This document shows positions 8,481 through 34,614 of a stretch of 64,000 nt of DNA, piece by piece. The position numbers were made by a program, and so were the translations under genes. This DNA is from Mobula hypostoma (Eukaryota): contig NC_086098.1 of assembly GCF_963921235.1 (NCBI RefSeq), positions 236,034,001-236,098,000 of the forward strand, given 5' to 3'. Below the pieces are notes generated by a model. It was not told where the DNA came from. It ran no database searches and was given only the letters and a program-made list of their open reading frames with translations. Positions within the stretch are counted from its first letter, which is position 1; the number at the start of each line of letters is the position of its first letter.

Positions 8481-9754
8481 ACCTCCTGGTCCCAGGAGTA
8501 GAGTAACACACACACAAAATGCTGGAGGAACTCAGCAGATCGGGCAGCATCTATGGAAAGGAATACACAGAAGACGTCTTGGGACTCTTTGACAGTAACC
8601 AGATCTGCGACAAAAGAGATTCTGCAGATGCTGAATCTCTTGTGTTTATTGATTGATGGAGGAACTCAACGGGTCAGGCAGCATCTATAGAGAGGGGTTT
8701 GGCCCAAAATATTGACCGTTCATTTCCACCCCCATAGATGCTGCCTGACCTGCGGAGTTCCTCCGGTGTTTTACATGCTAACTAGACCCATGCTTTCCTG
8801 GAATTCCCAAATGGTTCCGATTAAGTATATTTGACGGTGTCTGTCTTGTTTCCGACAGCGGCTATCAGGATGGCGGCGCGGAGATCGTCAAACAGAGCTC
8901 CTCGGGTAGGCTGTACCTGTCACATGTCCACTGTGGCCTTTGCTCTTTGTCTGTGAAACAATGGTTGTGCGCAGAAACAAGAGGGAGGAAGGGGCGGAGA
9001 GGAATAGGGGGAATCTCAGGATTCGCATTATCAGAAGCGGTTTATTATCACTGTCATGAAATTTGTTTTGCGGCAGCAGTTCTGTGCAATACATAAAATA
9101 CTATAAATTACAATAAGATATATGTTTAGTAATTTATAAAGCACCGCCAGTTTTCAGAAGTGGGAGAATGGAATGGATTTAAAAATAAAATTATCATCCA
9201 GGTACACATGTGTCACCATAAACAACCCTGGGATTCATTAATTATCGAGAACTTGAGATGAAGAGTCCTTGAAAGTGTATCCATTGTGTGGGGGTATTTC
9301 AATGATGGGACAAGTGAAGTTAGTGATGTGATCTCCTTTGTTCAAGAGCCTGATGGTTGAGGGGTAGTAACTGTTCCTCAACCCGATATGGATGAGATGA
9401 TGGAAGAAGTGGATAAGGGGCACGAGAAGGAGGGATGGTGATGAAGGGAATGAAAGCAGAGGAGAGGGACGGAAGAGAGAGTTGGGATAAAAGAGACAGA
9501 AAAGATGGGAGTGGGAAAGGGCGTAGTGAAGGAGGGGAGAGAAAATAGCGGAGGGACAGAGACGTTCGGTAAGGGTATGGCGGAGAGGAGGGAAGTGAGG
9601 GGGCGGTGAAAGATGAGAAAGAGGGAGGAGCGGTATTGTGGGGATGGTAGTGAGGAGAGCGAGAGGAAGGGAGGAGTGTGTGGAGTGTGGAAGAGGCAGA
9701 GGGAAAGATAACTGATAGAGGTAGAAGTGAAAGGTTAGAGAGGTGGGAGACGAC

Positions 9755-10219: not shown

Positions 10220-10252
10220 ATGACACCGAGCGCTGAGTGCGGATGGCGGTCG
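10220..10252 (+). CDS. plin6: Perilipin (PLIN6-like) exon 1, MTPSAECGWRS
   Basis: ATG with a phase-0 donor G|GTGGGT, then a 73-nt intron ending in a pyrimidine tract and CAG at 10325. TATA-like TTTAAAT at 10184-10190. Assignment rests on splice logic only. Confidence 0.55.
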
Positions 10253-10325
10253 GTGGGTTATTCTTAATAACCCTAGGTTCTATGTGTCCCCTCTACCTCT
10301 CCCACATTCCCACCCCGCCCTCCAG

Positions 10326-10524
10326 ACCAGTGTCGTCCGTCGCTTCGGGGAACTCCCGCTGGTCAGCTCCAGCACGCAGCTGGCGGTGGCCACCTATTCG
10401 GACATGAAGCGGAGCTTCTGGCTGACTCGTTCCGTGTGTGGCCTGGTGGAGGGCAGTGTCAGGCTGGCGGCGCGCCTGACGGCCAAGGGCATTCAACCGG
10501 TACTGGAGAGCTTCGAATCTCAAA
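10326..10524 (+). CDS. plin6: Perilipin (PLIN6-like) exon 2, PAT domain
   Basis: TSVVRRFGELPLVSSSTQLAVATYSDMKRSFWLTRSVCGLVEGSVRLAARLTAKGIQPVLESFESQ matches the PAT signature (V.RV..LPLVSS...Y...K...SVC..AE.GV.....P....LEPQI). 199 nt, CAG acceptor, phase-1 GTGAGC donor. Confidence 0.9.
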
Positions 10525-10759
10525 GTGAGCGGGGTGCGGGGGTTCGGGAACGGTACAGGACCAATGCCCGGCGCGGGTGGTCTGTACAATCTCTTTACGA
10601 TGTAGCAGAGAAAGTGCTGCATATCTGTGGCGCCTGTCACGTCCCTTTCACGTAGCCCCAGAATAAATGAGCGCTCTACAAGTCCTCCTCACACCTCTCC
10701 CTCCATTTCTGTCCCCCTTTCCCCTCTCCCTCTAACCTATCCTCTTCCTCATTGCTCTA

Positions 10760-12340
10760 AAGTTTCTAAATAGGAGAAAAGCCAATTTCGATGGCATCAG
10801 AAAAGATCTGGTAAGTGTGGATTAGGACAAGTTGTTTTCTGGTAAAAGTTTACTTGGTAAGTGGGAGGCCTTCAAAAGGGAAATTTTCAGAGTACAAAAT
10901 TTGTATTTGCCTGTCAGAATAAAAGGTAAACATAGCAGGTACCGGGAACCTTGGATTTTCAAGAGATATTGAGGGCCCGGTCAAGAAAAAGGTGTAAACT
11001 GGTGCGGGCAGGTAGGAATAAATGAGGTGCTTCAGAAATGTAAAAAGAACACTTAAAGAAATCAAGAGGGCTAAAGGATGGCAGGAGATTGCCCTAGTAG
11101 ACAAGGTGAAGGAGAATCCTAAAGGATTCTATAGATATTTTAAGAGCAAAAGGATTTGCAAGGCACAAAATTGGTCCTCTAGAAGATCAGAATGGTAATA
11201 CAGTATATACACGGAGTCAAAAGAAATGGGGGAGATCTTAGGTTATTTTCTGCATCTGTATTTACTCTGGACGCAAGGCAGTATCGGCTTCATGAACCCT
11301 ACTACAGAGGAGGAGGTGTTTGCTGTCTTGAGGCAAATTAGGATGGATAAATCCCCAGGGCCTGGCAAAGTGTTCCCTTGGACTTTGTAGGGACAATAGC
11401 AGAGATATTTCGATCATCCGTAGCGACAGATGACATACCGGAGGATTTCTAATGTTGTTCCACTGTTTAAGAAAGACTCTCTTTTAAAAAATCAGGAAAT
11501 TATAGGCCCGTGAGCCTGACCTCAGTAGTGGGAAAGTTATTGGACAGTATTGTAAGGGACCATATGTATACGAGTATATCGATGGACGGGGACTGTTTAG
11601 AGATATTCGGCGTGGCTTCATGCGTGGTAAGTCATGTCAAACAAATGTTGTAGAATTTTTCGAGGAAGCTACCAGAAATATTGATGAAGGCATTTGACAG
11701 ATCCGGCATGGGAGGTTGGTCAAGAAAGTTCAGTCGCTCGGCATTTAAGATGAGGTAGTGAATTGGATTAAACGTAGGCTTTGTGGGAGGAGCCAGAGGG
11801 TGATAGTAAATGGTTGCCTCTCTGGCTGGAGTCCTGAGACTAGTGGAGGGCGCAGGGATCACGAATGGGCCCGTTATTGCTTGTCATTAATATCGGTGAT
11901 CAGGTTGAGAATATGACTAACCGGATCAGCAGATTTCTGGATGATACGGAGATCAGGGGTATAGTGGACAGCGAGGAAGATTATCAGAGCTTGCAGCGGG
12001 ATCTGGACCAGTGGAAAATGGGCTGAAAATGGCAAGTGGAACTTAATTTAGCCAAGTGCGAGGTGTTCCACGGCGGTAAGACCATCCAGGGTAGGTCTTA
12101 CACCGTGAGCAGTAGGGCACTGAGGAGTATGGTAGAGAAAAAGGGATCTGGGAATACAGATACTAAATTCACTGAAATAGGCGTCACATATAGACAGGGT
12201 CTTAAAGAAAGCTTTTGGAACATTGGCCTTCATAAATCAAAGTACTGAGTACAGGAGATGGGATATTAAGTTGAAGTTGTATAAGACGTTGGTGAGGCCC
12301 AATTTGGAATATTGAGTGCAATTCTGGTCAGCTCCCATAG
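10760..12340 (+). mobile_element. Degraded CR1 LINE ORF2 fragment
   Basis: Remnants of KSPGP, GNYRPVSLTSVVGKLL, DDTEI and YKTLVRPNLEY, with many stops and frameshifts. Confidence 0.8.
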
Positions 12341-14504
12341 AAAGACCCTGCGGAAGGAGGTGCCTGGCCTTTGCCAGGTGACAGCAGTATCCCGGGTTGT
12401 ATCTCTCGGGACAGGGCGAAGCGCCTGTGTGTTGACGCTGTAATGCTTGACAATGATCTTCATTCACTGTCCACTAAGTAAAGTGGAACAAACAAGTTGT
12501 AAATATCTTCTCCCTCCGACGTGGCGCCAGGCGACTAATTCATCCGCCTCGCTCCCACATTACATAGCCAAATACAGTACAAACGGGTTGTTTCACCAGC
12601 ACCAACGCCCTAATATACCTGCCTGTACCACCAGCCCTGGCAAGGCACTCCATGTATCCAACCCTCTATACGTAAAAAGAAAAACATACCTCTGACATTC
12701 GCCTTATACTTCCCTCCACTCACCTTAACCTCTGCCACCCTGGGGGAAAGGCGCTGCCTGACTAGTCTGTCTATGCCTCTCATATGGAACGATCTGTCGC
12801 AGGAAGTGTTTCGGGCAGGTACAATAACAACATTTAAAGGACAATTGGATGGCTGCACGGGTAGGAAAGGATTTGAGGGACATGGGGCAAATGAGAGCAC
12901 ATGGGACTAACTTGCATGGACTCCTTGGTCGTGATAAACAAGTTGGCTCTGAGTTACAAATGAAAGTCCTTCTTCCCAGAACGGAAATCTGGGAAAAGGT
13001 GATTGTAGAAAAGTATATTGAGGTAGATTTTTACCCAGCGTGGTGGGTGTGTGGAACGTGCTGCCAGGAGTGATGACAGAAGCAGGTACATTACTGGCAT
13101 TTAAGAAACTCAGACAGGCGTAGTGACAGAAACGTGGAGGGCGATGTGGAAAGGAAGAGTTACTTCGTTCGTGGAGTAGATTAGAAGGGCTCGTATTGTG
13201 CCCTAATGTTCTATGTTCTTATTTGGGGGTCTATATAGGAGGAAGACTTTAGATTGATCTTAGCGTAGGTTAAGGAATCAGCATAACATTGAGGGACGAA
13301 GGGCCTCTACTGCGCTAGACTGAAGGGCGAGTTGCAGGGCAGGTGAGGGTGTGGGTGGGGTTAAAGGAGAGTTGGAGGTGTTGGATAATAGGAATGCGCC
13401 ATTTGGAGCCTTTATGGGCTGAATGGGCTCTCCCTTGTGGTAATGCGGGTGAGAGTCAGGTGTAAACCTTGCGCGCAGTCTTTAAGCTACAGTGTCGTAA
13501 CTTCACGCGAGCCCCAGGCGGTGAAAGTTCCGGAGTTGAGCTAATAAGGCTCCCGTTGTGTGAGTGCCCTTACCCACCAGATTCGTGCTTATCACACGTG
13601 ACCGTGACCAAACTGAATCCCGAGATATCCTCCTGCTCCTAGGGTCACCGAGCTATACAAACCGCTGTTTTGTTGGCCTTAGACAGCAAACGGGTGTCGA
13701 AGCTGAACTCCCTACTCCCAAGTAACGGAAGTGATAGTACCCAGTACATTACTGTAGTCCACCAGCCCCAGAACCACCACCCCGCTCCCATCGCCCACCA
13801 ACTTTCTCCCGGGGCCCGGGGTATAGTAGTATAGTAGCTATGGAGCTGCCCCCAACATCTCCCCCCCCCACCCCACTTTGCTGATCTTATTTACTTGGCC
13901 GTATATACGCTGCGGTAAATTCAGACTAATGGGTGGAAAGTCAAGGCCATCGGCGCGTTGCATGGACAAGGGGAAGACATTGGTTCCCTCCCCTAACCCA
14001 CCGTTCACAGGGGAACAGGGGGCTAGCACTCCTCCCCTGAACCTTTCTCACCACAATGCAACTTTGACCTATCGACCCCTTAACCCTTCGCCGACTGGCT
14101 TTGCATTACGTCCACTCATCTGCTGATTTCTGGCAACCCCGATTGACCCGATCCGCGGTTGTTTGAGGTTGGGGTTAGAGCGCCCGGATCCTCGCCACTC
14201 CCCCAACTCCTGCTCGGGAGCTAGATATTCTGACAACCTCTCTGTTTGTCCGGTTCTGCGGTAGTTCTCTCCCCTTGCTCCGGACTCTACACTCTCCCTG
14301 CTGCCGAGGAAACCGCTGCGGGCAAGTCGATCCGAACTGCCGGGCAGAAGGCAGGACAAACTCTCCATTTAACCCCTCGTGAACTAGCGTCGGACCTGTT
14401 GCGCTTAGTGACAGAGCGGGGTTGTTAAATGGGAACTACAGAGGTAAGTCTCAGGGGTGTATGTGACCTATAACCCCACCACTCTCCCGTACCCGTCCCC
14501 GCAG

Positions 14505-14587
14505 TTAACGTCGCCAATGACGTCGCAGCCCACAGACTGGACAGACTGGAAGAGACGTTCCCCATCCTCCAACTTTCGGTCGATGAG
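14505..14587 (+). CDS. plin6: Perilipin (PLIN6-like) exon 3
   Basis: (I)NVANDVAAHRLDRLEETFPILQLSVDE matches the PAT C-terminal motif (AN..A..GLD.LEE..PIL). 83 nt, phase 1 to 0, CAG acceptor and GTAAAT donor. Confidence 0.9.
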
Positions 14588-14789
14588 GTAAATGTGCCAG
14601 CGGACTCCCCGGGTGTTCCGCAAACTCGCAAGGTGGCGGGGGGAGGGGTGGCGGACCAACCTGATACCCGGGATCTACTCCCAGTGGGCGAGTCCCTCCC
14701 ACCGCCCGCAACCCCTTCGATGGATGAGGCCCCTAACAAGGGTCCACTCATCCAACGCCGCTTGTCCACACTCAGTCGCCATTAAAAAT

Positions 14790-16300
14790 TAGCGGGAAGG
14801 TAGAGGATTGGAAAGCTTTTAAAAACCTACAGAGAGAAACTAAAAGAATCACAAGGAGGGAACAGATAAAATACGAAAGCAAGCCAGCGGACAACGTCAA
14901 AGTTTACAGTAAAAGCATTTTAAGGTATGTAAAATATAAAAGAGATGAGCGTGGATATAGGACAGCTAAAAATGAGACAGGAGAAATAATAACCGGGGGA
15001 CAAGGAGATGGCTGATTAACTAAATGAGTATTTTACATCAGTTTTCATGTCAAAGACACTAGCTGTTTGCCAGATGTTGAAGGGTGTGAGGATCAGAAGT
15101 GAGTGTAGTTACGATTACAAAGGAGAAGGTGCTAAAAATAAAAATTGGAAGACCTAGTCACTCAGATCAGATGAACTGCACGTTGGTGTTCTGAAGGAGG
15201 TAGCGTTAGAGATTGTGGAGGCATTGGTAATCATCTGTCAAAAATCATTGGACTCTGGCATGGCACCAGAGGACTGGAAAATTGCAAGTGTCACTCCACT
15301 CTTTGAGAAAGGAGGAAGGCAGCAGAAAGGAAATTATAGACCAGTTATCCTGACCTCAGTGGTTGGGAAGATGTTAGAGTCAATTGTTAAGGATGAGGTT
15401 ATGGAGCACTTGGTGGCACAGGACAAGATAGGACAAAGTCAGCATCGTTTCTTTAAGGAAATAGGTAAGCTGCAGATGGTCTCAGACAGATTAAGAGAAT
15501 GGGTAAGAAAGTGGAGAATCAAATACAATGTTGGAAAATGCATGGTCATTCACTTTGGTAGAAGAAATATTTTCTAAACAGGGAGAAAATCCAAATTTCT
15601 GAGATGCAAAGGAACTTGGCAGAACCCCCTAAAGGTTAACTTGCAGGTGGAATCAGTGGTGAGGAAGGCAAACACAATGTTGGCATTCATTTCAAGAGGT
15701 CTAGAATACAAGAGCGAGGATGTGATGCTGAGGCTTTCTAAGGCACTGGTGAGGCCTCACCTTGAGTATTGTGAGCAGTTTTGTGCTCCTCATCTAAGAA
15801 AAGATGTGCTGGCATTGGAGAGGGTTCAGAACAGGTTCACGTGGATGATTCTGGAAATGAAAGAGTTATCATATGAGGAACGTTTGATAGCTCTGGGTCT
15901 GTGCTAGCTGGAATTCAGAAGGATGAAGGGGGATCTCATTGAAATCTTTTGAATGTTGAAAGGCCAAGGCAGAGTCAATGTGGAAAGGATATTTCCTATG
16001 GTGGGAGAGTCTAGAACAAGAGGGCACAGCCTCAGAATAGAGGAGCATTCATTTAAAATAGATGTAGAGAAGTTTCTTTTGCCAGAGGGTGGTGAATTTG
16101 TGGAATTTGTTACCACAAGCTGATGTGGAGGCCAAACTGTTGGCTGTATTTAAGGCAGAGCTTGATGGGTTCTTGATTAGACATGACATCAAAGGTTACA
16201 GGGAGAAGGATGGGGAGTGGGTCTGAGCAGGGGGAAAAGATTCAGCAGTGATTGAATAGTGGAGAAGACTCAATGGCCTAAATCTGCTCCTATGTCTTAT
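14790..16300 (+). mobile_element. Degraded, internally deleted CR1 LINE
   Basis: PEDWKIASVTPLFEKG...GNYRPVILTSVVGKMLESI and ALVRPHLEYCEQF, plus the CR1 3' UTR. Confidence 0.85.
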
Positions 16301-16648
16301 GGCCTTATTCCACTGGGGATGTCCTAATTCTAAACTTCATCAAATTTCATGTCCTTCACACATCACCCCCCTCCAACCCTACACCCGTCCCTGTTTCTGT
16401 AACCCCCCTCCAGTACCTACAGCCCTCTCCATCTCTGTAACCGGGTCCAGCCATACACCCCTCCCATATTTAACCCTTTCAGCCCCTATACCCTTCCATG
16501 TCTCTGTAACCCCCCTCCAGGCCCCACACCCTCCCTGTTGCCATAACAAATTTCCATTGAAAAGGCTGACCTTCATCATTAAAGGATTCTCTCCCCCCAT
16601 GGGCGTTGTCTGAGACCTTGTCTGACCTCCAACCTCCTTCACCACCAG

Positions 16649-16900
16649 GTGATCTCACACCTTGGAGAATCCATCAGCCTCAGCCTGCAGGATGCACAGG
16701 AGCGGGTCTCCCTTGGGCGGAAAGACCTAATGAAGAGGACGACAACTGCCATGGAGAGGTACAAGAGCTTATGGCCAGACAGGCCACTGCATTCCTCAAC
16801 TCAAGCCTGGGACAGGCGCTGGAAGCTGGGGGAGTCCAAGTCCTGGTCAGGCTGGACCAAGCAGTGGACCACTACCTTCCCAACAATGAGGAAAATGGTG
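16649..16900 (+). CDS. plin6: Perilipin (PLIN6-like) exon 4, with an apparent 1-nt deletion
   Basis: Starts VISHLGESISLSLQDAQERVS in one frame. The perilipin-like end (LNSSLGQALEAGGVQVLVRLDQAVDHYLPNNEENG) is in another frame. Length is 252 nt where 253 is needed. CAG acceptor, GTAAGT donor. Confidence 0.85.
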
Positions 16901-16999
16901 GTAAGTGAGGCAGGCCGAGCTCAACGGCAGCAGTGTCCCGTTACTAGACACCAGGATCCAACCGCAGGGATTCACCCTTGGGAGACAAGGCCAGTATTG

Positions 17000-18700
17000 G
17001 ATTTATTATGGCCTTCATTAGCCGGGGTCAAAGTTCATAGATTCCTCAAAGTTGCCGCACAAGTTGATAGGGTTGTTAAAGAAAACATATGGTGCGTTGA
17101 TCTGCATTAGTCAAAGAACTGAGTTCAAGAGCTGCAAGGTACAGTAATGTTGCAGCTCTGTAAAACTGGTTAGACTGCACTTAGAGTTTTGCTTTCAGTT
17201 CTGGTGACATCATTAAAGGAACGATGTGAAAGCTTTAGAGAGGTTGCAGAGGAGATATACCAGGATGCTACCTGGATTAGAGAGCATGCATTATGAGGAC
17301 AGGTTGAGTGAGCAGGTTCTCTTCTCTTTGGAGTGAAGAAGAATGAGAGGTGAATTGATAGAGGTATATGAGACTATGAGAGATACAGATAGAATGGGAA
17401 GCCAGCACCTTTTCTCCAGGATGTCAATAGCCAGTACATCTATTTAAGCTGAGTGGTAGAAAGGTTTGGGGAGACTTCAGAAGTAGGTTCTTTTACACAG
17501 ATAGTAGTAGGTGCACTGCCGCAGGCTGATACATTGGGACATTCAAGAGATTTTTAGGTAAGCACATGGATGATAGAAAAAAAATTGGGGTTTCGGGCTG
17601 TGTACAAAGGAAGGTTTAGATTGATCTTAAGAGTACATTTGTATTGGAAGAGATGACACTGTGGGCCGAAGGGCCTATACTGTGCTGTTCTGTGAGACAG
17701 TGAAAAACTTTGTCGTGTATGTCATACTTACAGATGTGAGTGTACTCGTAAGGAAAAAGTGCTGGAGAAGCTGAAAAGTCTGAAAGTAGTTAAGTTTCCT
17801 GCATCCCAGGGTTCTGAAAGAGGTAGCTGAAGGGATTGTGGAGGGATTAGCAGTGATTTTTTGAAGTTGTGGTACTGGAATAGTTCCATACGACTGGAAA
17901 ATCACTAATATCACCCCACTCTTTAAGAAGGGAGGGAGGCAGGCAAAAGACAAGAAATTATAGTCATTGGTAAGATGTTGGTGTTTATTACGAAGGATGA
18001 AGTTTCAGGATACTTGGAGGCACATGATAAAATAAGCTAAGTCACATGGAAAAGTCTTGCCTGAAAACTTTGGAATTCTTTGAGCAAATCATCAGCAGGA
18101 CAGACAAAGGAGAGTCGGTGAATACCGTTTACTTGGATTTTCAGAAGGCCTTTGACAAAATGCCACACATAAGGCTGCTAAACAAGGCAAGAGACCATGT
18201 TATTGCAGGAAAGATACTAGCATGGATAGGAGAGTGGCTGCCTGGCAGGAGGCAAAGAGTGAGAATAAAGGGGGCCTTTTCTGATTGTCTGCCAGTGGTG
18301 TTCTGCAAGGGTCAGTGTTGGAACCACTTCTCTTCACATTATATGTTAATGATTTGGATGACAAAATTTATAGTTTTGTGCACAAGTTTGCAGATGTCAC
18401 AAAGATAGGCTGTGTTGTGGAAACAGAGAGTCTGCAGGAGGACAGATAGGTTGGGTAAAGCACAAGAAAAGTGGCAGATGGAATATAATGTATGCTCATA
18501 CACTTTGATAGAGGAATAAAGGCATAGTTTATTTTGTAATTAGGAAGAAAAATCAGAAAATGAGATGCATAGGGATTTGGAAGTCCTGCAGGATCCCCTA
18601 AATGCTAGTTAACTTGCAGGTTGAGTTGGTAGAAAGGAATGCAAATGCAATGTTTGCATTTATTTTGAGAAGGCTAGAATGTAAAAGTAAGGAACTTGAC
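17000..18700 (+). mobile_element. Several degraded CR1 fragments
   Basis: SCLKTLEFFEQI...VYLDFQKAFDKMPHIRLL RT remnant and CR1 3' ends. Confidence 0.75.
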
Positions 18701-19957
18701 TTGGAATTGGTTTATTATTCACATGTACTGAGATACAGTGAAAAGCCTATCTTACATACTGTCATGCAGATTAATTCGTTGCAACAGTGCATTGGGGTAG
18801 TACAAGATAAAGCAGTAACAATGCAGAACAAAATGTAACAGCTACAGAGAAAATGTAGTGCAGGTAGCTAGTATGGCACAAAATCACAACAAAGTGTATA
18901 GTAGGGCCAAGAGTCTACCTAATCATACCAGGAAACCAAGCTTGGAGTTGTTGGGTGGAAAAGGCAAAGGGACAGAGAAGGAATCTGATGGGAGAGGGGA
19001 GTGGACCTTGGGAGAAAGGGAAGGAGAATGGGCAGCAGGGGAAGGTGATAGGCAGGTAAGGATAAGAGGCAAGAGGCCAGAGGCCAGAGAGTGGGGAATA
19101 GAAGAACAGGGAGAGGGAAAATACACCTGGGGTAGAAATCGTCATTCATGCTATCAAGTTGGAGGCTGCCTAAACAGAATGTGAGGAGTCACTCCTCCAA
19201 CCTGAGAGTGGCCTCACCGTGGCAGAAGAGGAGACCCTGTACTGACCTGTCAGAACGGGAATGGGGACAGGAATTAAGATGATTGGCCGTAGGAAAGTAC
19301 ACAAGACAGTTGAGAGAAAGACCATGCAAAAGAAGACCTTAGTATAAGGAAAGCCACTGTGCAATTCCATGTGGTTTAAGAGGTGGTCCATAGTGTTCCA
19401 CTGCTGAGGTGGGGTGAGTGTTGTGTCAGTGTGGAGACAGAGCTAAAGGGAAGACTTAAGGAAAGTCACAGATTTAGAGAGGGAAGGGGTGAGGTTTCCA
19501 TAATCTGGTTCCACGCGGCTAGAGGAACGACATCCAGTAGTGGGGCAATGAGTGTAGGAGATGGCCAGGGGGCAGTACAGGGGAAGTGGGACAATTCTGC
19601 ATTGCTGGGAAAAAGTAACTGGAGAGTGATGTAACATCGGGAAGGGGTTATAGAGCCAAGGAGAGGTGCAGGGGATGGAGCAGGGTTACAGAGGTGGGGA
19701 GGGGTGTAGAGTACGGTGGGGTTTACAGAAATGGGGAGGGCTGGAGGGGCTGGAGAAGTTTACAGAAACGGGGAAGGGTGTAGGGACCAGAGGGGTTTGC
19801 ATAGATGGTGAGCGTTGGTTGATGTGTTTGAGGAGGGTGATAGAGGGACTGTTGTACTCTGCTGCTATGACTCTCCCTTCCTTCATCACTGGAGGATGTT
19901 GTCTGTAAGTAGTTTGTACTTTCTCCCCATGGCTGCATGAGTTACCTCTGTGGTTTC

Positions 19958-20426
19958 TAACTGCAGGAGTATTGAGGCCATGAACTCCCAGCGCCAGCTG
20001 CAGTGGCTGGGGCACGTGTTAAGGATGCCCCCATGTCGGCTACCCCACAGAGTGTTATATGGCCAGCTACATCATGGTTGACGCTCAGCTGGAGGGCCGA
20101 AGAAGCGCTATAAGGATCAGATGAAGAATGCTTTAAGGAAGTGCAAGATCAGACCCAAGGACCTGGAGGATGTTGCTGCTGACCGTACCACTTGGTAACA
20201 GCTGTGTAGGGACGGGGTTCGTATTCTGGAAATGGAAAGAACAACCAGAAAACAGCAGAAGAGAGCCAGGAGAAATGCAGCCATGGTTGCCACCACTACC
20301 ACATATACATGTCCCACCTGCAATAGAGCTTGTAGGTCCAGGATAGGACTGTATAGTCATCAAAGATCTCACCATTAAAGGAGTGGACATTATCATCGAT
20401 TTTGATGGACAACCGAAGAAGAAGAA
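19958..20426 (+). mobile_element. 5'-truncated RTE LINE with (AAG)n tail and long TSD, inserted in a V-SINE-like element
   Basis: QLQWLGHVLRM...VLYGQL...GGPKKRYKD...CPTCNRACRSRIGLYSH. Exact TSD TGAGTTACCTCTGTGGTTTC at 19938-19957 and 20430-20449. Confidence 0.9.
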
Positions 20427-20898
20427 GCGTGAGTTACCTCTGTGGTTTCCTCCCACAGCCCAAAGACGTACTGGTTGTTAGGTTAATTGGTCATTGTATA
20501 TTGTCCCATGATTAGCCGAATGTAAAATTGGGAGGTTGCTGAGTGGTGTGGTTCAAGGAACAGGAAAGCCCAAATAAATGTTACCGGCACCTGTAAGTGA
20601 GGTTCTGTGGCACGTCGGATCCCGGCCAAAGCCGGGTGCCAGGGACCAGGCGCCACTCGGCACAGAGCCAGCAGTGTCAGCAGGTTCCTTGTAAGTTCTG
20701 CATCTTGGGTCCTGAGCGGCGTGTGTTCGGTCACTCCATCCCAGGGCTGAGCCGCTCACGTGAGCCCAGTGTCGGAGGGGTAAGATGTGGGGGGTAGGCT
20801 GTCCCCCACGCCACTCCATTCTGGTGCTAGGTATGAGTGGAGTCCACGCTGCTGGTATGCTGACTGACCACCTCCCTCCCTTTCTCTCCCTCCTACAG

Positions 20899-21077
20899 GT
20901 GAAAACCGTTCAGCCGGCGACGGACAGGCAGAAGAGCAGCTGGCTCTGGTCCCCTGGGCACGAAGGCTGTTACTGAAGTTTGGGCTCTGCTGGCAGGACA
21001 GGGCATTAGTCTACACAGAGACCCTATGGGAGGGGACCTTGACCAGCGCTCTGCTCATCTCCGAGGGCATGAACAGG
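20899..21077 (+). CDS. plin6: Perilipin (PLIN6-like) exon 5
   Basis: Strong polypyrimidine tract and CAG. Open only with phase-1 entry: (G)ENRSAGDGQAEEQLALVPWARRLLLKFGLCWQDRALVYTETLWEGTLTSALLISEGMNR. Donor GTAGGT, with an alternative donor GTGTGA after 21081. Confidence 0.75.
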
Positions 21078-21557
21078 GTAGGTGTGACAGCTGCCCATCC
21101 CTAACTGTCCTGCACCCTACCAATGGACCATCCCATCTCTCTCCCATACCCCCTTACAAAAAACCTGAACCCTTCAATGCCTATAAACCCCATAACTCTA
21201 CAAAGAGACACCGGCATCTCCCTCCCCATGAGTTCACTTCACAACCCCACATACCTACATATCCTAAACATCTCTTCCCAACACTGACAAGACAACCCAA
21301 ACTCCCCCACTTAATTTCCATGTCCACTCACCTTCCCATACATATATACCACTACAGAACACAACTTTGCTCTACTGACACCCCACACCAACCCACCCCA
21401 CTCCCAACTTACATTCTACATATCTGCCTCTCCACTCCGCCCGAACCTCTCCATCCCATGCTTGTTTGTCCCTCTCTTCTCTCCCCTCACGTCTCTCCCC
21501 TCCCTTCTCCTCTCTTCCCTCCCCTCTTTCTCCCCTCCTCCCTCCCCCCACCCCTCC

Positions 21558-23800: not shown

Positions 23801-25125
23801 TCCTGGCCTTCTCACTCTCATTCAGAGGTTTTTATGGGCCGATGTAGCGTGAACGCGTGGGTTCAGCCAAAGACCCGTACTGGACCCCCACTGGAAACGC
23901 CGGACCCCCGCGCCACGACGGGCGGCGGAGCCCGGAATGATATATGTATGTATACTGCATATCTCACTCTGCCTCTCTCCCTCGCATTCTGTTTCTCTGC
24001 CCCCTCCCTCTCCCCACCCTCCCCAGCTCTCTGTGCCTTCCTCCAGGCTGTTGTTCACAGCATCGGAGAGTTATGGTTGCTGCTGTAATAGTCCTATAAC
24101 CAATGTACAGTCACCAAACTGCACACCAGCCCTGTGCACAGGAACCAGATGCTGTTCACAACACTATAGAGAAGACACTGGAGACTCACCAGTCTGCTGC
24201 ATTGATCAGAGAATTACACAGCATACAAGCAGACCATTCTGCCCATCATAATCATGCCAGCCACTGGCACCACTGGTATCAATGCTGGTATAAACATTAT
24301 TAACCCATATATACCCAGGGGACTCAGGGGCTGGTATAAACACTATTAGTAAGTCTGTTTACACCATCCTCCGGTTACTCGCTGCTCTCTGGGTGGAGGA
24401 GGTCCCCCTCACATCCCCTCTAAATCTCTTTTCCACACCCCCACTCTAAACCTGCACCACTAATCAGTTCTCCCCCTCTCCTGCCACCTCGCCTCTCCTC
24501 ATGTGGGATGACAGCCTGAAACTGTGAGAATTTCTCCCCACCCCGCTCATTGGGGGTGCGGGAGAGGGGATGGGGAATGGAGGTGAGGAGGAGGAGGAGG
24601 AGGGGACGGGGGAGATAGAAAGGGCAGAGGGAGGGGTTGGGGTGCAGTGGTGATGGGATTGATAGAGGTGAAAGGAGGAGATGGGGGAGTGGAGAGGGAA
24701 GGGGATGGGAGAGGTTTAGGAGGAGGGGGGAATGGGGTGGGAGGAGGTAGAAGGGTCAGAGAGTGAGGGCGGGTGATGGGGAGTTGGAGAGGTCGAGGGG
24801 CAGAGGTCAGGGAGGAGGATGAGGTGGTGGAAGCAATGCGGGGAGTTAGAGGAGGAGGGGATTTAGGAGGGGAGAGGAAGGAGTGAGGGGATGGGGAAGG
24901 TAGTGGGATGAGGCATGGAGGGAGATGCAGGTTGAGGTGAAGGGTAAGAGATGGAGGAAATGGAGGAATTGAAGGATGGGGAGTGGTGGAAATGGAGTGA
25001 ACGGCACGAGGAGGTACAGCATGTGAATCTGAGAGTGCAAAGTGGGGTGGGGGAGGAGGAAGAGTGGATTCATTGCCCTCCCCACCCCTCCGAGCTAACG
25101 CTCTCCAGTCCCTCACCTCCTCCAG

Positions 25126-25340
25126 CTGTGGAGGTCCCAGCCGCTGCCGTTCCGGTTCCTAGTATTCGAATCAGCCGCCTGTCCTGGCTCCAGCTCCAAC
25201 TACAGGCACGTCTGACCCGCACCGGCCTGGGCCTGATGCAGTTTGGCCACAGCTGCTTGCGACTCGCCCAGCGGCTGATCTGGAGCCCCAAGCTCACCGT
25301 GCTGGGGATGATGCTGTTCCTCAATGTACTTGGCAGCCTG
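25126..25340 (+). CDS. plin6: Perilipin (PLIN6-like) exon 6, entry phase unresolved
   Basis: Pyrimidine tract and CAG at 25125, GTAAGA donor at 25341. Long open frame ...SRLSWLQLQLQARLTRTGLGLMQFGHSCLRLAQRLIWSPKLTVLGMMLFLNVLGSL. At 215 nt it needs phase-1 entry or one extra base. Confidence 0.6.
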
Positions 25341-25610
25341 GTAAGAAACTAACTTCCCCACCCCACTCCCACAGTCCGTAACACCCCTGCCTCCCTCCCC
25401 GCCTCCGTAACCTCCACCAGCCCCTGAACCCCTCCCCGGATCTGTGAACCCCACTGGACCCCTCCCCCTCTACAACCCTCTCTGTCTCTGTAAGCATACC
25501 TGCCCAGACATGCCTGGTTATTCCAGATGCCATGGCTCAAACTTCAGCTCTCTGAACTCTTCCCCCACCCCACCGAAATACACTCCCTTCCCGACGTACC
25601 CTCCCCACTC

Positions 25611-25625
25611 TGTGTGTGTGTGTGG

Positions 25626-25662
<37 letters not shown>
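25611..25662. repeat. (GT)n(GA)n compound microsatellite
   Basis: Directly visible. Confidence 0.95.
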
Positions 25663-25664
<2 letters not shown>

Positions 25665-27674
25665 TCTGAGAGAGACTTTTGGAGAGTATGTGGGAAAATG
25701 TGTGTCTGTGTGTATGAGACAGATTTAGACACACAGACAAGTGTGTATGTGCGATGTCTCAAGAAGACAGTATCCATCATTAAGGACCCCCAAGACCTGT
25801 CCTCTTCTCATTACTATCATCAGGGAGGAAGTACAGGAACTGAAGACACTCACTCAACATTTCAGGAACAGCTTCTTCCCCTTCGCCTTCTGATTTTTGA
25901 AAGGACACTGGATCCATTTTTCCTTCACTATTTTTGCTCTTTTTTCACTGCTTAATGTAATTGGATTATGTTTTCTTATTGTAATTTATAGTTTTAAAAT
26001 TATTATGTATTGCAGTATACTGCTGTCGCTAGGCAACAAACTTCACAAGATATGCCAGGGTTATTAAACCTGATTGTGATTCCTGTCTTTTCCCCATGGT
26101 AGAAATGTCAAGCATGTTTTTAAGGTTAGATAAGAAAAGTTTAAAGGTACTTGAGAGGCAAGTTTTTTTTAAAAAACACAGAGAGTGGTAAGTGCCAGGG
26201 ATGGGTGGCCTGGGACAGCAGGCAGTTTGGTAAGTTTAAGACACTTTTAGATAGAGACGTGAATATGAAGGGAATGGAGGTTATGGACAATACACATGAA
26301 GGAGAGATTTAGCGTAATTTGGAGTGCTGAGAGGGTTATGAGCCGTATAGGAGGGAAGGGTTAGATTGATCATGGAGTAAGCTTCTACAGGTTGACACAA
26401 CATCGTGGGCTAAGGGCCCATACTGTGCTGCACTGTTCTGTGTAACACTGACCAGGCCAAATGACCTGTCCAACGCTGTGTTCTAAACCAAAGCTTTTCA
26501 CTGTATCTTGATACACGTGATGAGAAGAAGCCACTTACCAATCACATCTACCTTACATCCCTCCTGCCAAATTACAACACAGAAACGCGCCCTTCGGTGC
26601 ACAATGTTGACTGGATCAATTAAATTATTAATGAGGTAGCCAATTAACCTGTTCCCTTGTGCCTACACAGTGTCCTTGTCCTTCCATTTTCCACACATTT
26701 GTTTGCCTATCTAAACGTTTCTTAAAAGTCCCTAATATATTTGCCTACACCATCATCCCAGGCAGTGAATTTCAGGCACCCACGACTCTCCGTATAAAAA
26801 AACACTTCTCCCTTACATTTCCTTTGAAATTATCCCATCTCACCTCAAGTGCACACCCTCTGGTATTAGACATTTCAATCCTGGGGGGGGGGGCGAAATT
26901 CTCTGTCAACTCTATCTTTGCCTCTCTTAATCTTATAGACCTCTGTCTGATCTCCCCTCAGCCTCCACGCTCCAGAGAAAACGACCCAAGTTTGTCCAGC
27001 CTCTCATGATAGCACATGCCCTCTGTTGCAGGCAGCATCCTGGTAAACCTCTTCTGCCCTCTCCAAAGTCTCAGCATCCTTCCTATAGTGGGGTGACGAG
27101 AACCGTACGCAATCCTCCAGATGTGGCCTAACCTGAGTTTTATAAAGCTGTAACATAACTTCCTGACCTTTGAACCAAATTCTGTTATTTAAAAGTGCGC
27201 ATAGCAGGTATAGCAGAGGAACATTCGGCCCACGATATGCTGCCAAACCAATTAAAGTATCGGTGCCTAATTACATGAATCCCTTCTACTTTCTCCGTAT
27301 CCCTCCACTTCCTGCACATCCACGTCCCTAAGAGCCTCTTGAACGCCTCTATCGTACTTCCCTCCACTACCACCCTGGCAGCGCGTCGCATCTCCTTTGA
27401 ACTTTCCCCTTCTCATCTTGAATACACGCCCTGAGGTATTAGACATTTCTACCCTGGGAAAAGATTCCGACTCTCTACGCTGTCTTTGCCTCTCCTGATT
27501 TTACGAACCTCTATTAGGACTCCCCTCAGTCTCCGACACTCTGGAAAAAACCAGCCTAACTCTGTCCAACCCCATAAATACAGGAGATTGTACAGATGAT
27601 GAAAAGCTAGAGCAGCTCACACAAAATGTTGGAGGAACTCAGCAGGTCAGGCAGCATCTATGGAACTGTATAAA

Positions 27675-27712
27675 CAGTCGACGTTTCAGGCCGAGACCCT
27701 TCATCAGGACTG
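27675..27712 (-). ncRNA. Minimal type I hammerhead ribozyme motif in a Penelope-derived MITE
   Basis: - strand reads cagtc-CTGATGA-AGG(gtctcgg)CCT-GAAAC-GTC-gactg: intact core, 5-bp stem I, 3-bp stem II, palindromic ACGT stem III, GUC cleavage triplet. Confidence 0.75.
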
Positions 27713-27894
27713 GAAAGGGAGGGTGAAAACGTCAGAACAAAAATAAATGTGTGTGTGTGTGTGGGGGGGGGGGAGGTTTGTTGAATCTCTCCTTACAACT
27801 CATGCCCTTTAATCTAGACAGAACCCCGGTAAACCTCTTCTGCACTCTCTCCAAATCCTTCCTATAATGACAAGTGGTCTCTCACTTTCCTGAA

Positions 27895-28508
27895 ACATAC
27901 ATCAAAGTTGCTGGTGAACGCAGCAGGCCAGGCAGCATCTCTAGGAAGAGGTACAGTCGACGTTTCAGGCCGAGACCCTTCGTCAGGAATAACTGAAGGA
28001 AGAGTGAGTAAGGGATTTGAAAGTTGGAGGGGGAGGGGGAGATCCAAAATGATAGGAGAAGACAGGAGGGGGAGGGATAGAGCCGAGAGCTGGACAGGTG
28101 ATAGGCAAAAGGGGATACGAGAGGATCATGGGACAGGAGGTCCGGGAAGAAAGACAAGGGGGGGGGGGGTGACCCAGAGGATGGGCAAGAGGTATATTCA
28201 GAGGGACAGAGGGAGAAAAAGGAGAGTGAGAGAAAGAATGTGTGCATAAAAATGAGTAACAGATGGGGTACGAGGGGGAGGTGGGGCCTTAGCGGAAGTT
28301 AGAGAAGTCGATGTTCATGCCATCAGGTTGGAGGCTACCCAGACGGAATATAAGGTGTTGTTCCTCCAACCTGAGTGTGGCTTCACCTCCACAGTACAGG
28401 AGGCCGTGGACAGACATGTCAGAATGGGAATGGGATGTGGAATTAAAATGTGTGGCAACTGGGAGATCCTGCTTTCTCTGGCGGACAGAGCGTAGATATT
28501 CAGCAGAG
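27895..28508 (-). mobile_element. Penelope-like element 3' fragment (GIY-YIG endonuclease C-terminus, 3' UTR and hammerhead motif at 27954-27990)
   Basis: LRSVRQRKQDLPVATHFNSTSHSHSDMSVHGLLYC...RLEEQHLIFRLGSLQPDGMNIDF. Near-identical to 48468-49118. Confidence 0.85.
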
Positions 28509-29274
28509 CTCACTTTCCTGAACTCGTCTGCCCACGCCCACCAGTCCTGGGATCAACCAGACTGGACGCCTCGCCCTGTGCCAAACATCACCATCCTTCA
28601 CGTTACACTGCCGAGGTTAAATCTGGACACAGCACGCTCCGGGAGGGAGAGAGTGATTCATCACATGGTTTGTAGCTGTAATCGGATTCTCAATGAAGAG
28701 CCCCAAGGGCATCACGGAGATATCGAGTAGGGAGTGCACGTGGATCCTCTCAGCCCGACAGGAGACAAAACAAGACTGATACCCCACTGCACCGCTCCTG
28801 TCAGCCGATGCCCCTCTCGCCTCTCCGGACGTGGAGCGGAGTAATTGAAACCCGGGCCTGGTCTCCTAGTTAATCATAACGTAGCTGATCTGATAATAAC
28901 CTTGTTCACAGGACCCGTTTATCCAGAATCACGAAACCCTCACAGAACCTCTGCTCTTCTCGGGAGACGGATCCAAATACCCTCACACCGAGAATTAAGT
29001 TTTGTCTTGAATGGGAGACCCTCTTATCTTTAACCAGTGTCTTGCGGATCGTGTGAGGACGGACCACCGTGGTGTATACGTAGCAGAGAATGGCCTCAAT
29101 TTCTCTGCAACACAGACGCACACGCACATATACATATATTCTGAGACAATCACACACACAGATACACAGTGTGAGGCATAGGCGCACATGCACTCTGGGG
29201 CACACCCTGACGTAACATAAACACATACATATATACATTCTGAGACACACTCACGTATATTGAGTTTAGGCATA

Positions 29275-29275
<1 letters not shown>

Positions 29276-29332
<57 letters not shown>

Positions 29333-29348
29333 CACACATACACACACA
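29276..29348. repeat. (CA)n microsatellite within a larger CA/GT/CT low-complexity tract (29110-29870)
   Basis: Directly visible. Confidence 0.95.
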
Positions 29349-29864
29349 ACAGATAGAGAAACAAGTCACAAAAGCAAGCCCTCTTCCTATCAATGACCAT
29401 AGGATCAGACAGAGAGGTAGAGAGTGGCTCCCCTGTGTGATTTGTTTCTCTATCTGGTGGGGGTGTGGGGGTGTGTGTGTGTGTGTCTGTCTCTGTATAT
29501 CTCAGTGTGGCTCAGTGAGTGTGTTTGTGTGTTCGTCTGTGCGTGTCTCTGCGTCTGTGTGTGTGTCTGCGTATGAGTCTGAATGTGTCTGTCTCTCTGT
29601 CTCTTTGCCACAGTCTGTGCCTGTCTGTCTGTGTCTCACAGGCATACACACAGACGCACATCACTCCACAGACTCTGCTTTTCTGTTTGTTACTCTCTCT
29701 CTCTCACACACAAACACTCCCACAGCGAGTGTACCTCTCTCTCTCTTTATCTATCTATTCCTCAATCTCTCTATCGCTTTCTTTCTATCTCTCTCTATAT
29801 CACTCTCTACCTTTATCTTTCTATCTCTCTCTCTCTATGCCTTTCTCTCTCTATCAATCTCCCT

Positions 29865-30150
29865 CTCAATCCTGTTGTTTGTCATTGATAATAATTCTCT
29901 GATTAACGCTCCTGTTAAAAGCCTTGCAAAAGTTGGACCAGTGTATGTTTACCAGGCGGGAGGGAGAATGAGACATCTGCCCCTACGTGATTTAATCTCC
30001 AGCCCCATCCCTCAGTGGGGAACGTGTTCTGTCTCCGGCCAGCTCTGCCGATCTAATCGGATTGTCAGCGCTGAGCCCCGGGGCAGAAGCTGCTCCTTCA
30101 CACAGACACGTGTATCCTGGACGTCGGCAGCTCACTGCGCCTGCCAGCCC
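29865..30150. promoter_or_regulatory. Candidate enhancer with paired-class/K50 homeodomain motifs (second copy at 38352-38672)
   Basis: CTGATTAA at 29899-29906, TTTAATCT at 29991-29998, TAATCGGATTG at 30054-30064 directly followed by the palindrome TCAGCGCTGA. The block is strongly conserved in the duplicate. Confidence 0.4.
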
Positions 30151-30758
30151 CGATACTCTGCTGTGGGAGGGGGCAGTACCGAGAAAGCGTCGCATCATGC
30201 ATGGCGGGGGTTGGGGGGGGGGGAGGGTAACCGAGACACTCCGTGCTGTGGGAGGGCCGATACTGAGGAAGAGAAGAACTGTGTGAATCGTGCCCTGATG
30301 AGGGTGTGCTACACTGGGGCTAGCTGTAAGGAGAGAGCGCCGTATTGTGGGAGGGCGGTGCTGAGGGGCCCCTGCACTATTTGTTCGTGGGGAGTTTGTT
30401 TCTGTGATAATTAGCCCTGTTTGTCGCTTCTTCCCGCCCCCGCACCTCCCCATACCTACTCGCCCTCTCATCTTCACCCTCTTCCACCCTCCTCTCCCCC
30501 TTTCCGCTCCCCTCTCTCTCCTCGTTCTCATTACGCCTCCTCTTCTCCCCTCCTCTCACCTTCTCCTTTTCCGCATCCTATCCTCAACCCCATCCACCAT
30601 CCCCTTCCACCCTCCTCCACTTCCTCTTTCGCCGGCTCCCCCGCCCCCACACTCATCTCTTCCCCACTGCGTCCTCCCGTACCACCTGCTTCTCCTGTCC
30701 CCTTTCCTCGTGCCCTCCCCCTCTTCTTCTAACCCCCCCCTCCCCGCCCCCCTCCCAG

Positions 30759-31115
30759 CTGCTGGAGCCGGAGGAGCAGGAGGAGAGCAAGGAATCCGGG
30801 GAGGAGTCGGCGGACGACCTGTACGAAACGGGCATGTGGACGGGGCGCGGGCAGAGCTCCCAGGGGCAAATGATTCTCCTCGACCAGGAGGCCATTCAAC
30901 TGATGCTGAAACAGGCGAACTGGCGGCAGCGCTCTCGCCACCAGGAGCAGCCGGACCGCGGCCTCTGCCCCAGCCCCCGCTCCGAACCCCAGAGTCCTGA
31001 CGAACGTAACATGAACGAACAACCGTTCGGCCCGCGCAGGCCCTCTCTGGCCGAGCAGCTCCGGGGAGATCCTCGCAACTCCCGGGCGCCTGCTGTAGCT
31101 GACATCGTGCAGTGA
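30759..31115 (+). CDS. plin6: Perilipin (PLIN6-like) terminal exon 7
   Basis: Long pyrimidine tract and CAG. Phase-0 ORF LLEPEEQEESKESGEESADDLYETG...PFGPRRPSLAEQLRGDPRNSRAPAVADIVQ*: acidic stretch followed by a PKA-consensus RRPS, GC-rich codon usage. Confidence 0.7.
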   Translation: MLEPEEQEESKESGEESADDLYETGMWTGRGQSSQGQMILLDQEAIQLMLKQANWRQRSRHQEQPDRGLCPSPRSEPQSPDERNMNEQPFGPRRPSLAEQLRGDPRNSRAPAVADIVQ

Positions 31116-34440: not shown

Positions 34441-34517
34441 CTGTGCGTGCGGGGAATCCCAGATGTTGAAACAGATGTCTCTTCCGTCCACGGTCACGTT
34501 GTGTGTGTAAACAGTCT
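34441..34517 (-). CDS. RASL11/RERG-like small GTPase, exon 3
   Basis: (E)TVYTHNVTVDGRDICFNIWDSPHAQ. 77 nt, phase 1 to 0, CAG acceptor and GTAATG donor. Confidence 0.9.
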
Positions 34518-34614
34518 CTGTCAAGTGGCAGACAAGAGCGAGTGTGAGTTAAAGATGTCCCCCAAAACACCCAGTGCGGTTCCGGACTGACGGATTCCGG
34601 AGTTCCGTACTCAC

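What the first reader, a model, noticed from the sequence alone, without database searches (positions are those of the whole stretch)
10220..31115. A PLIN6-like perilipin in an apparent cartilaginous fish
Seen: seven splice-consistent exons encode a ~440-aa protein (after repair) with a PAT domain, almost no 11-mer repeat region and an acidic tail carrying an RRPS site. Established: PLIN6 was described as a teleost-specific perilipin that coats carotenoid droplets in xanthophores and traces to the early vertebrate genome duplications. Inference from remembered sequences: the segments after the PAT domain (EVISHLGESISLSLQDAQ; G...VLVRLDQAVDHYLP; LVPWARRLLLKFGL) look like PLIN6 rather than PLIN1-5. 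If so, PLIN6 predates the bony/cartilaginous split and points to a carotenoid- or lipid-droplet system in elasmobranch skin or eye. The six-frame ORF track does not show this gene as a unit.
Basis: partly seen in the sequence, partly recalled or inferred. Interest (0 to 1): 0.75.

Follow-up and report, generated by a model that had tools for sequence, protein, structure and literature searches.

The report
Broken PLIN6-type perilipin gene in a ray
This is a real seven-exon gene for a lipid-droplet coat protein whose gene neighbours match the fish pigment-droplet perilipin PLIN6, but the copy in this ray genome has lost two single DNA letters and probably no longer makes the full protein.

Summary
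The gene is real. It is a seven-exon perilipin gene on the + strand at 8870-31115. Its PAT exon hits Pfam Perilipin (E 1.4e-10). Sharks and rays carry intact orthologues of 422-483 aa, the closest being Hemitrygon akajei at 84% identity.

- Exon 1 lies at 8870-8905, not 10220.
- The "repair" hides two 1-nt deletions, in exon 4 (~16758) and exon 6 (~25167). As assembled, the mRNA encodes 143 genuine residues and stops at codon 216. An independent DNA contig of the same species has no gap across the exon-4 site. The exon-6 site could not be checked with reads.

Synteny supports PLIN6 orthology:
- All six cartilaginous-fish loci and a teleost perilipin locus share a tail-to-tail small GTPase.
- The teleost perilipin sits next to a synaptotagmin-4/11-type gene, as published for zebrafish plin6.
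- Sharks have a PEX11B-type gene upstream, not PEX11A, which argues against PLIN1.
- ERCC6L is a neighbour only in rays.

No phylogeny against labelled PLIN1, PLIN2 and PLIN6 could be built. Among mammalian PLIN1-5, PLIN1 is the nearest, but that rests on a poor model.

Verdict: a new, here probably pseudogenised, member of a known kind. The scan had not noted this gene before.

The parts
8870..8905 (+). Exon 1 (MAARRSSNRAPR), with start codon and GT donor
   Evidence: tblastn with the Hemitrygon orthologue P0017; sequence; the N-terminus is conserved in Narcine and Heterodontus
10220..10252 (+).
   Evidence: It has an ATG and a possible donor, but no orthologue has this N-terminus
10326..10524 (+). 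Exon 2, PAT domain
   Evidence: Pfam PF03036 E 1.4e-10; AG/GT sites; 91% identical to Hemitrygon
14505..14587 (+). Exon 3 (INVANDVAAHRLDRLEETFPILQLSVDE)
16649..16900 (+). Exon 4, 252 nt, one base short of the orthologous 253
   Evidence: Reading frame changes from 2 to 1 inside the exon; sequence
16757..16760 (+). Frameshift 1: one base missing (GAGAGG^TAC; orthologues read ..AGGG.A..)
   Evidence: DNA alignment to Pristis; X1 DNA contig covers 16279-17065 with 0 gaps
20899..21077 (+). Exon 5; holds the first premature stop of the literal reading at 20974-20976
25126..25340 (+). Exon 6, 215 nt, one base short of 216
   Evidence: Reading frame changes from 1 to 3 inside the exon; sequence
25163..25169 (+). 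Frameshift 2: one base missing (GTATTC^GAATC)
   Evidence: DNA alignment to Pristis; not checked with reads
30759..31115 (+). Exon 7: acidic run (30771-30818), RRPS protein kinase A (PKA) consensus site (31035-31046), stop TGA at 31113-31115
   Evidence: run X25 holds 0.70 of the sampled words of 30759-31300
4098..4757 (-). First coding exon of the divergently oriented ERCC6-type SNF2 helicase (ERCC6L by architecture)
   Evidence: ORF; best solved relatives are Rad26/ERCC6; orthologous ray loci carry a 977-1460-aa SNF2 gene here
33304..36863 (-). Four-exon Ras-family small GTPase, tail-to-tail with the perilipin gene. Exons about 36776-36863, 34613-34669, 34441-34515 and 33304-33740. Intact.
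38222..39717 (+). Degenerate direct copy of the perilipin 3' end (29734-30578 ~ 38222-39131 at 70%; 31042-31379 ~ 39388-39717 at 79%). It has an in-frame stop and lacks most of exon 7.

Best explanation
The locus is the ray copy of a perilipin gene found throughout cartilaginous fishes. It is most likely the orthologue of PLIN6, the fourth perilipin paralogue from the early vertebrate genome duplications, known until now only from ray-finned fishes.

In intact orthologues the protein would work like other perilipins. This is inferred, not shown.
- An N-terminal PAT domain and following amphipathic helices bind the monolayer of neutral-lipid or carotenoid droplets.
- A helical core follows.
- An acidic stretch and up to three C-terminal protein kinase A (PKA) consensus sites make droplet behaviour responsive to cAMP, as shown experimentally only for zebrafish Plin6.

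In this genome two independent one-base deletions, in exon 4 and exon 6, break the frame. The mRNA as assembled encodes the PAT domain (143 residues), then 72 out-of-frame residues and a stop in exon 5 of 7. That position should expose the transcript to nonsense-mediated decay. This copy is therefore most likely a recently inactivated unitary pseudogene, while close relatives such as Hemitrygon keep an open frame.
For: Family: Pfam Perilipin hit; intact orthologues in six cartilaginous-fish species, named only 'uncharacterized' or 'perilipin-1/2/5-like'.

PLIN6 orthology:
- The PLIN(+)/GTPase(-) pair is present in all six cartilaginous-fish loci and in the teleost locus L001.
- The GTPases share exon structure and the C-terminal tail. 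They score 135 bits to each other and 54 bits or less to any solved Ras protein.
- The teleost perilipin lies next to a SYT4/11-type gene. The eLife paper reports syt11b as plin6's neighbour.
- The shark upstream neighbour is 53-55% identical to mammalian PEX11B and 38-41% to PEX11A. PEX11B lies on human chromosome 1 (background knowledge), where the paper places the lost PLIN6 region.
- The profile of the cartilaginous-fish proteins aligns to the teleost protein over 340 columns, against 221 for a turtle PLIN3.
- Shark and sawfish proteins carry three C-terminal PKA consensus sites, as Plin6 does.

Broken here:
- Frame changes occur inside two exons.
- Each site shows a single-base gap against Pristis DNA.
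- The literal reading stops at codon 216.
- An X1 DNA contig spans exon 4 with no gap, and it differs from the assembly at 16917, so it is not a mere copy of it.
- The helicase exon and the GTPase, about 1.3 kb of coding sequence in the same window, have no frame breaks.
- The window's terminal branch is 0.13 against 0.071 for Hemitrygon.
- All five substitutions in exon 4 that are specific to this species are non-synonymous (my codon reading).
Against: - No tree with labelled PLIN1, PLIN2 and PLIN6 sequences could be built. The one teleost protein used is called PLIN6 only because of its neighbour.
- Pairwise BLAST does not place the ray or shark proteins closer to the teleost protein than to reptile PLIN3-like proteins.
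- Among reviewed mammalian PLIN1-5, Foldseek ranks PLIN1 first (E about 1e-6, against 1e-3 for PLIN2). The model is very poor, with pLDDT 38.
- Frameshift 2 rests on the assembly alone.
- X1 may come from the individual that was assembled, and contigs drop rare variants.
- The whole gene evolves fast even where it is intact (dN/dS 0.57-0.65), so the non-synonymous excess is weak evidence of decay.
- A run guessed to be RNA still holds the last exon.
Confidence: 0.58

Rival explanations
1. The gene is an intact, working PLIN6-type perilipin in this ray, and the two frame breaks are sequencing or assembly errors.
For: Both breaks are losses of one G next to another G. All splice sites, the start and the stop are preserved. 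The close relative Hemitrygon has an open 440-aa frame. Other notes of this scan report single-base frameshifts in other genes of this genome, which could reflect assembly quality. A run guessed to be RNA holds the last exon.
Against: An independently built contig from DNA run X1 covers 16279-17065 with no gap, and it differs from the assembly by one substitution. Runs of two or three identical bases are not typical sites of consensus error. About 1.3 kb of neighbouring coding sequence in the window has no breaks. No protein from this window's gene turned up in the protein collections.
Confidence: 0.2
2. The cartilaginous-fish gene is the orthologue of PLIN1, or a co-orthologue of a PLIN1/PLIN6 ancestor, not of PLIN6.
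For: Foldseek against reviewed proteins ranks mammalian PLIN1 first over the whole length. NCBI names the Chiloscyllium protein 'perilipin-1-like'. The PEX11 -> PLIN order and orientation in sharks mirrors human PEX11A -> PLIN1 (the human order is background knowledge). Like PLIN1, the protein has a long tail with an acidic stretch and PKA sites.
Against: The shark PEX11 neighbour is of the B type, not the A type. The downstream GTPase is shared with the teleost perilipin that lies beside a SYT4/11-type gene, the published position of plin6 and not of plin1 (PMC5342826). The structural model behind the PLIN1 ranking has pLDDT 38. PLIN6 itself is not in that library, so the ranking shows only that PLIN1 is the nearest of PLIN1-5.
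Confidence: 0.17
3. It is a lineage-specific perilipin paralogue of cartilaginous fishes with no one-to-one relation to any bony-fish gene. The shared GTPase neighbour is then a paralogue or a coincidence.
For: Sequence identity to the teleost protein is only 26-32% and is concentrated in the N-terminal half. The upstream neighbour differs in each lineage: SYT in the teleost, PEX11B in sharks, ERCC6L in rays.
Against: The same orientation and the same GTPase subfamily, with a conserved tail motif (VRSVSAV..G.KRE), occur in all seven loci. Both PEX11B and SYT11 belong to the human chromosome 1 region named in PMC5342826.
Confidence: 0.05

Closest known systems
PLIN6 (zebrafish zgc:162150; Granneman et al. 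2017, eLife, PMC5342826)
   Same: Perilipin with an N-terminal PAT domain and a long C-terminal tail carrying PKA consensus sites: three in horn shark and sawfish, one in stingrays. Its position matches the chromosome region with SYT11- and PEX11B-type genes. It shares the tail-to-tail small-GTPase neighbour with a teleost SYT-linked perilipin.
   Different: It occurs in cartilaginous fishes, whereas PLIN6 was described as restricted to ray-finned fishes. Identity to the teleost protein is only about 26-32%. Nothing is known of its expression or droplet targeting. In this window the frame is broken twice. In rays the upstream neighbour is an ERCC6L-type helicase.
PLIN1 (mammalian perilipin-1)
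   Same: Best Foldseek match among reviewed PLIN1-5. PAT domain, acidic stretch and PKA sites in a long tail. A PEX11 gene lies immediately upstream in the same orientation.
   Different: The neighbour is PEX11B-type rather than PEX11A. No kinesin (KIF7) lies downstream; a Ras-family GTPase does. Identity is about 19% in the whole-length alignment.
PLIN2/PLIN3 (adipophilin/TIP47 type, including the reptile 'perilipin-3-like' proteins found here)
   Same: 30-34% identity over the first ~180 residues (PAT plus the repeat region up to the conserved YLP motif).
   Different: The alignment stops at about residue 230. The ray and shark proteins have no C-terminal NTP..W.VGPF end, and they carry an extra acidic and PKA-site tail of about 100 residues.

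Membership tests
Perilipin family (Pfam PF03036) | N-terminal PAT domain matching the family profile above the curated threshold | tested here: met
   Exon 2: 41.2 bits against a cut-off of 33, E 1.4e-10. Orthologues carry PF03036.
PLIN6 | Groups with gar and teleost plin6, apart from PLIN1, PLIN2 and PLIN3/4/5, in a phylogeny | tested here: inconclusive
   Only one putative PLIN6 sequence (P0034) and no PLIN1 or PLIN2 sequences could be fetched. The tree has three groups and cannot decide. BLAST scores do not discriminate.
PLIN6 | Conserved synteny with the plin6 locus of ray-finned fishes (syt11b on one side; chromosome region matching human chromosome 1) | tested here: met
   The teleost SYT4/11-linked perilipin and all cartilaginous-fish loci share the downstream GTPase. 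Sharks have PEX11B-type upstream. SYT11 itself was not seen beside the cartilaginous-fish gene.
PLIN6 | Conserved C-terminal PKA consensus sites (three in teleosts, the last also in gar) | tested here: inconclusive
   Three [RK]Rx[ST] sites in Heterodontus and Pristis, one (RRPS) in the window, Hemitrygon and Hypanus, none in Narcine. Positional homology with the teleost sites was not established.
PLIN6 | Expression in xanthophores and targeting to carotenoid droplets | not testable with these tools
   One run guessed to be RNA holds the last exon. The only piece of it laid on the gene is unspliced, and the tissue is unknown.
PLIN6 | Open reading frame encoding the full protein | tested here: not met
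   Two 1-nt deletions; stop at codon 216. Deletion 1 is also present in an independent contig.
PLIN1 | Locus between PEX11A and KIF7 | tested here: not met
   The upstream PEX11 in Chiloscyllium is 53-55% identical to PEX11B and 38-41% to PEX11A. Downstream lies a Ras-family GTPase.

The most novel reading that the evidence does not exclude
[quoted passage not shown] It is kept intact, with its PKA-regulated tail, in sharks, sawfish and stingrays. It has been lost a second time, independently of land vertebrates, in this ray lineage. Loss might track the absence of carotenoid-based yellow or red pigment cells. That would make rays a natural knockout series for the function of PLIN6.
Probability: 0.25. 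Interest if true: 0.6.

Novelty: new member of a known kind. Interest (0 to 1): 0.45.

Why it matters
PLIN6 was published as unique to ray-finned fishes, and its origin in the early vertebrate genome duplications was inferred only from paralogous chromosome regions. An orthologue in cartilaginous fishes, still sitting between PEX11B and a conserved GTPase, would be direct evidence for that origin. It would also show that the PEX11-PLIN pair predates the duplications. These genes are currently annotated only as 'uncharacterized' or 'perilipin-1/2/5-like'. A species with a freshly broken copy beside relatives with intact copies gives a simple comparative test of what PLIN6 does outside teleosts. 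The practical lesson is that a 'repaired' frame should not be read as a working gene.

Tried and rejected
Searches that fell short:
- Three word-indexed protein searches returned at most 20 hits each. They gave cartilaginous-fish orthologues, reptile PLIN3-like proteins and one teleost protein, but no labelled PLIN1, PLIN2 or PLIN6.
- The exhaustive HMMER search with the 64-aa PAT exon gave only nine hits.
- Language-model look-alikes named only 'perilipin' or 'PEX11' clusters and could not separate paralogues.
- Full-text searches found no paper placing PLIN6 in cartilaginous fishes. The eLife supplements hold no sequences or gene lists.

Analyses that could not decide:
- The AlphaFold model of the Hemitrygon protein is poor (pLDDT 38), so the PLIN1-first ranking counts only as a weak lead.
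- The maximum-likelihood tree is uninformative, because only three groups were available.
- Solved structures could not name the GTPase subfamily.
- dN/dS does not separate a pseudogene from a fast-evolving gene.

Rescue of the frame, considered and rejected:
- A 20-nt 'intron' (donor at 16758, acceptor at 16777) would restore the frame in exon 4, but it is far too short for vertebrate splicing.
- Alternative acceptors inside exon 6 do not give the right phase (my reading).

Limits reached: only one stretch could be laid with reads, so frameshift 2 and the state of both sites in the two related species (X5, X10) remain unknown. Their contigs have 3 and 13 gap letters, but the positions were not listed.
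Full report
**What is in the sequence**

The window is vertebrate DNA full of LINE fragments. On the + strand, exon 2 (10326-10524) encodes a PAT domain. It matches Pfam Perilipin at 41 bits against a cut-off of 33, E 1.4e-10.

An exhaustive HMMER search with the PAT exon found full-length relatives only in cartilaginous fishes:
- Narcine bancroftii
- Heterodontus francisci
- Chiloscyllium punctatum
- Pristis pectinata

Word-indexed searches added Hemitrygon akajei (440 aa) and a 307-aa partial model from Hypanus sabinus. NCBI calls these proteins 'uncharacterized' or 'perilipin-1/2/5-like'.

The window is closest to Hemitrygon, at 84% identity over the read-through. It is identical to none of them, so the genome is another stingray-like ray. 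Other notes of this scan call it a devil ray. I did not test that.

**Gene model**

tblastn with the Hemitrygon protein, followed by inspection of the splice sites, gives seven exons:

| Exon | Coordinates |
|---|---|
| 1 | 8870-8905 |
| 2 | 10326-10524 |
| 3 | 14505-14587 |
| 4 | 16649-16900 |
| 5 | 20899-21077 |
| 6 | 25126-25340 |
| 7 | 30759-31115 |

All introns are bounded by GT and AG. Exon 1 encodes MAARRSSNRAPR. This N-terminus is conserved in Hemitrygon, Narcine and Heterodontus.

**The gene is broken here**

The reading frame changes inside exon 4 (frame 2 to 1) and inside exon 6 (frame 1 to 3). Aligned to Pristis DNA, each exon has exactly one single-base gap:
- exon 4: GAGAGGT-ACAAG against GTGAGGGCACAAG
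- exon 6: GTATTC-GAATC against GTGGCCAGGATC

Spliced as it stands, the message encodes 143 genuine residues and then 72 out-of-frame residues. It stops at codon 216 (20974-20976), in exon 5 of 7. By the usual rule, that position makes the message a target for nonsense-mediated decay. With X at each break the product is 440 aa.

I looked for rescue by splicing and found none. The only frame-restoring 'intron' in exon 4 would be 20 nt long. No alternative acceptor in exon 6 has the right phase.

**Reads**

Four DNA runs of one organism hold about 65% of the sampled words of 10200-17000. Two related organisms hold less. I laid 15250-21200.
- A 787-nt contig of run X1 covers 16279-17065 with no gap and one substitution (16917). 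That substitution shows the contig is not a copy of the assembly. Frameshift 1 is therefore in the reads.
- Contigs of the two relatives cover the exon with 3 and 13 gap letters. The positions were not listed, so their state is unknown.
- At five exon-4 positions (16688, 16709, 16725, 16745, 16859) both relatives agree with Hemitrygon against the window. By my codon reading all five changes are non-synonymous.
- A run guessed to be RNA holds 70% of the last-exon words. In the laid stretch it shows only an unspliced piece across the exon 5 donor, and nothing on exon 4. Transcription of a spliced message is not shown.

**Controls in the same window**

The helicase exon and the four GTPase exons, about 1.3 kb of coding sequence, have no frame breaks.

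The gene evolves fast even where it is intact, with dN/dS 0.57-0.65 among rays. The window's terminal branch is 0.13 against 0.071 for Hemitrygon. Both are only weak signs of decay.

**Which perilipin is it?**

Sequence similarity alone does not decide.
- BLAST scores of the ray and shark proteins to a teleost perilipin (P0034) overlap those to reptile PLIN3-like proteins.
- The tree has only three groups.
- Profile comparison aligns 340 columns with P0034 and 221 with a turtle PLIN3, at similar scores.

Gene order is more informative.

| Lineage | Gene order |
|---|---|
| Rays (window, Hemitrygon, Pristis, Narcine) | SNF2 helicase(-), PLIN(+), Ras-family GTPase(-) |
| Hypanus | the same GTPase downstream |
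| Sharks (Heterodontus, Chiloscyllium) | PEX11(+), PLIN(+), GTPase(-) |
| Teleost Prochilodus | C2-domain gene(+), PLIN P0034(+), GTPase(-) |

Three observations tie these loci to PLIN6:
- The teleost and window GTPases share exon structure and a tail motif. They score 135 bits (48.5% identity), against 54 bits or less for any solved Ras-family protein.
- The teleost C2 gene is of the synaptotagmin-4/11 type. The paper that defined PLIN6 gives syt11b as the left neighbour of zebrafish and gar plin6, and places the lost human counterpart on chromosome 1.
- The last exon of the Chiloscyllium PEX11 is 53-55% identical to mammalian PEX11B and 38-41% to PEX11A.

From general knowledge, PEX11A lies beside PLIN1 on human chromosome 15, and PEX11B lies on chromosome 1. 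So the shark arrangement is the chromosome-1-type mirror of PEX11A-PLIN1. That is what a PLIN6 orthologue predicts and a PLIN1 orthologue does not.

Horn shark and sawfish proteins have three C-terminal PKA consensus sites, the number reported for teleost Plin6. Stingrays keep one.

**What speaks against PLIN6**

Foldseek of a very poor model (pLDDT 38) ranks mammalian PLIN1 above PLIN2, 3 and 5. PLIN6 is not in that library. This shows at most that PLIN1 is the nearest of PLIN1-5, which fits PLIN1 and PLIN6 being sister paralogues as well as it fits PLIN1 orthology.

The identity of P0034 as PLIN6 rests on its neighbour, not on a name or a tree.

**Comparison with what is known, and verdict**

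The thing works like a perilipin and is a member of that family. Membership in PLIN6 is supported by synteny and architecture. It is not yet supported by phylogeny, and the feature 'open frame' is not met in this genome.

I found no paper reporting PLIN6 outside ray-finned fishes. The defining paper, however, already inferred an origin before the split of bony and cartilaginous fishes. The finding is a new member of a known kind, of moderate interest.

The main correction is that the copy in this window is most likely a young pseudogene, not evidence of a working droplet system in this species. My probabilities:
- PLIN6 orthology of the cartilaginous-fish clade: about 0.75
- at least one frameshift real: about 0.85
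- both statements together: about 0.58

Noticed in passing
window 38222-39131 and 39388-39717: A degenerate direct copy of the perilipin 3' end (end of intron 6, last ~70 nt of coding sequence and the 3' UTR; 70% and 79% identity) lies beyond the GTPase gene. It has an in-frame stop (SLTEQMQGDPRNS*APPVGGIAQ) and lacks most of exon 7. This overlaps another note of the scan on 29780-40863.
   Followed up: partly
Hypanus sabinus protein P0018 (no DNA served): The RefSeq model of the Hypanus orthologue has only 307 aa. It starts at a methionine inside exon 4 and lacks the PAT domain. The 5' half may be damaged or mis-annotated in that stingray too.
   Followed up: no
window 16917: The assembly has G where the contigs of the same species (X1) and of both related species have C. 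This is either an assembly error or a difference between haplotypes.
   Followed up: no
L002 39261-41687 (Pristis): In the sawfish an 808-aa single-exon Toll-like receptor gene (LRR plus TIR) follows the GTPase. tblastn finds no counterpart anywhere in this window.
   Followed up: partly
window 53123-56491, 59512-60253, and introns at about 11000-12300, 15150-16200 and 17860-18450: There is a nearly complete LINE with endonuclease and reverse-transcriptase ORFs (200, 291 and 367 aa) and a Tc1/mariner-type transposase remnant. Several reverse-transcriptase fragments sit inside perilipin introns. Contig depths there run into the hundreds of thousands.
   Followed up: no
window 29150-29650: A long (CA)n/(GT)n-rich microsatellite block in intron 6 gives spurious long ORFs of up to 384 aa.
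   Followed up: no
L004 698-970 and 2443-2814 (Chiloscyllium); shark loci: A PEX11B-type gene lies directly upstream of this perilipin in the same orientation. This suggests that a PEX11-PLIN gene pair predates the vertebrate genome duplications.
   Followed up: partly
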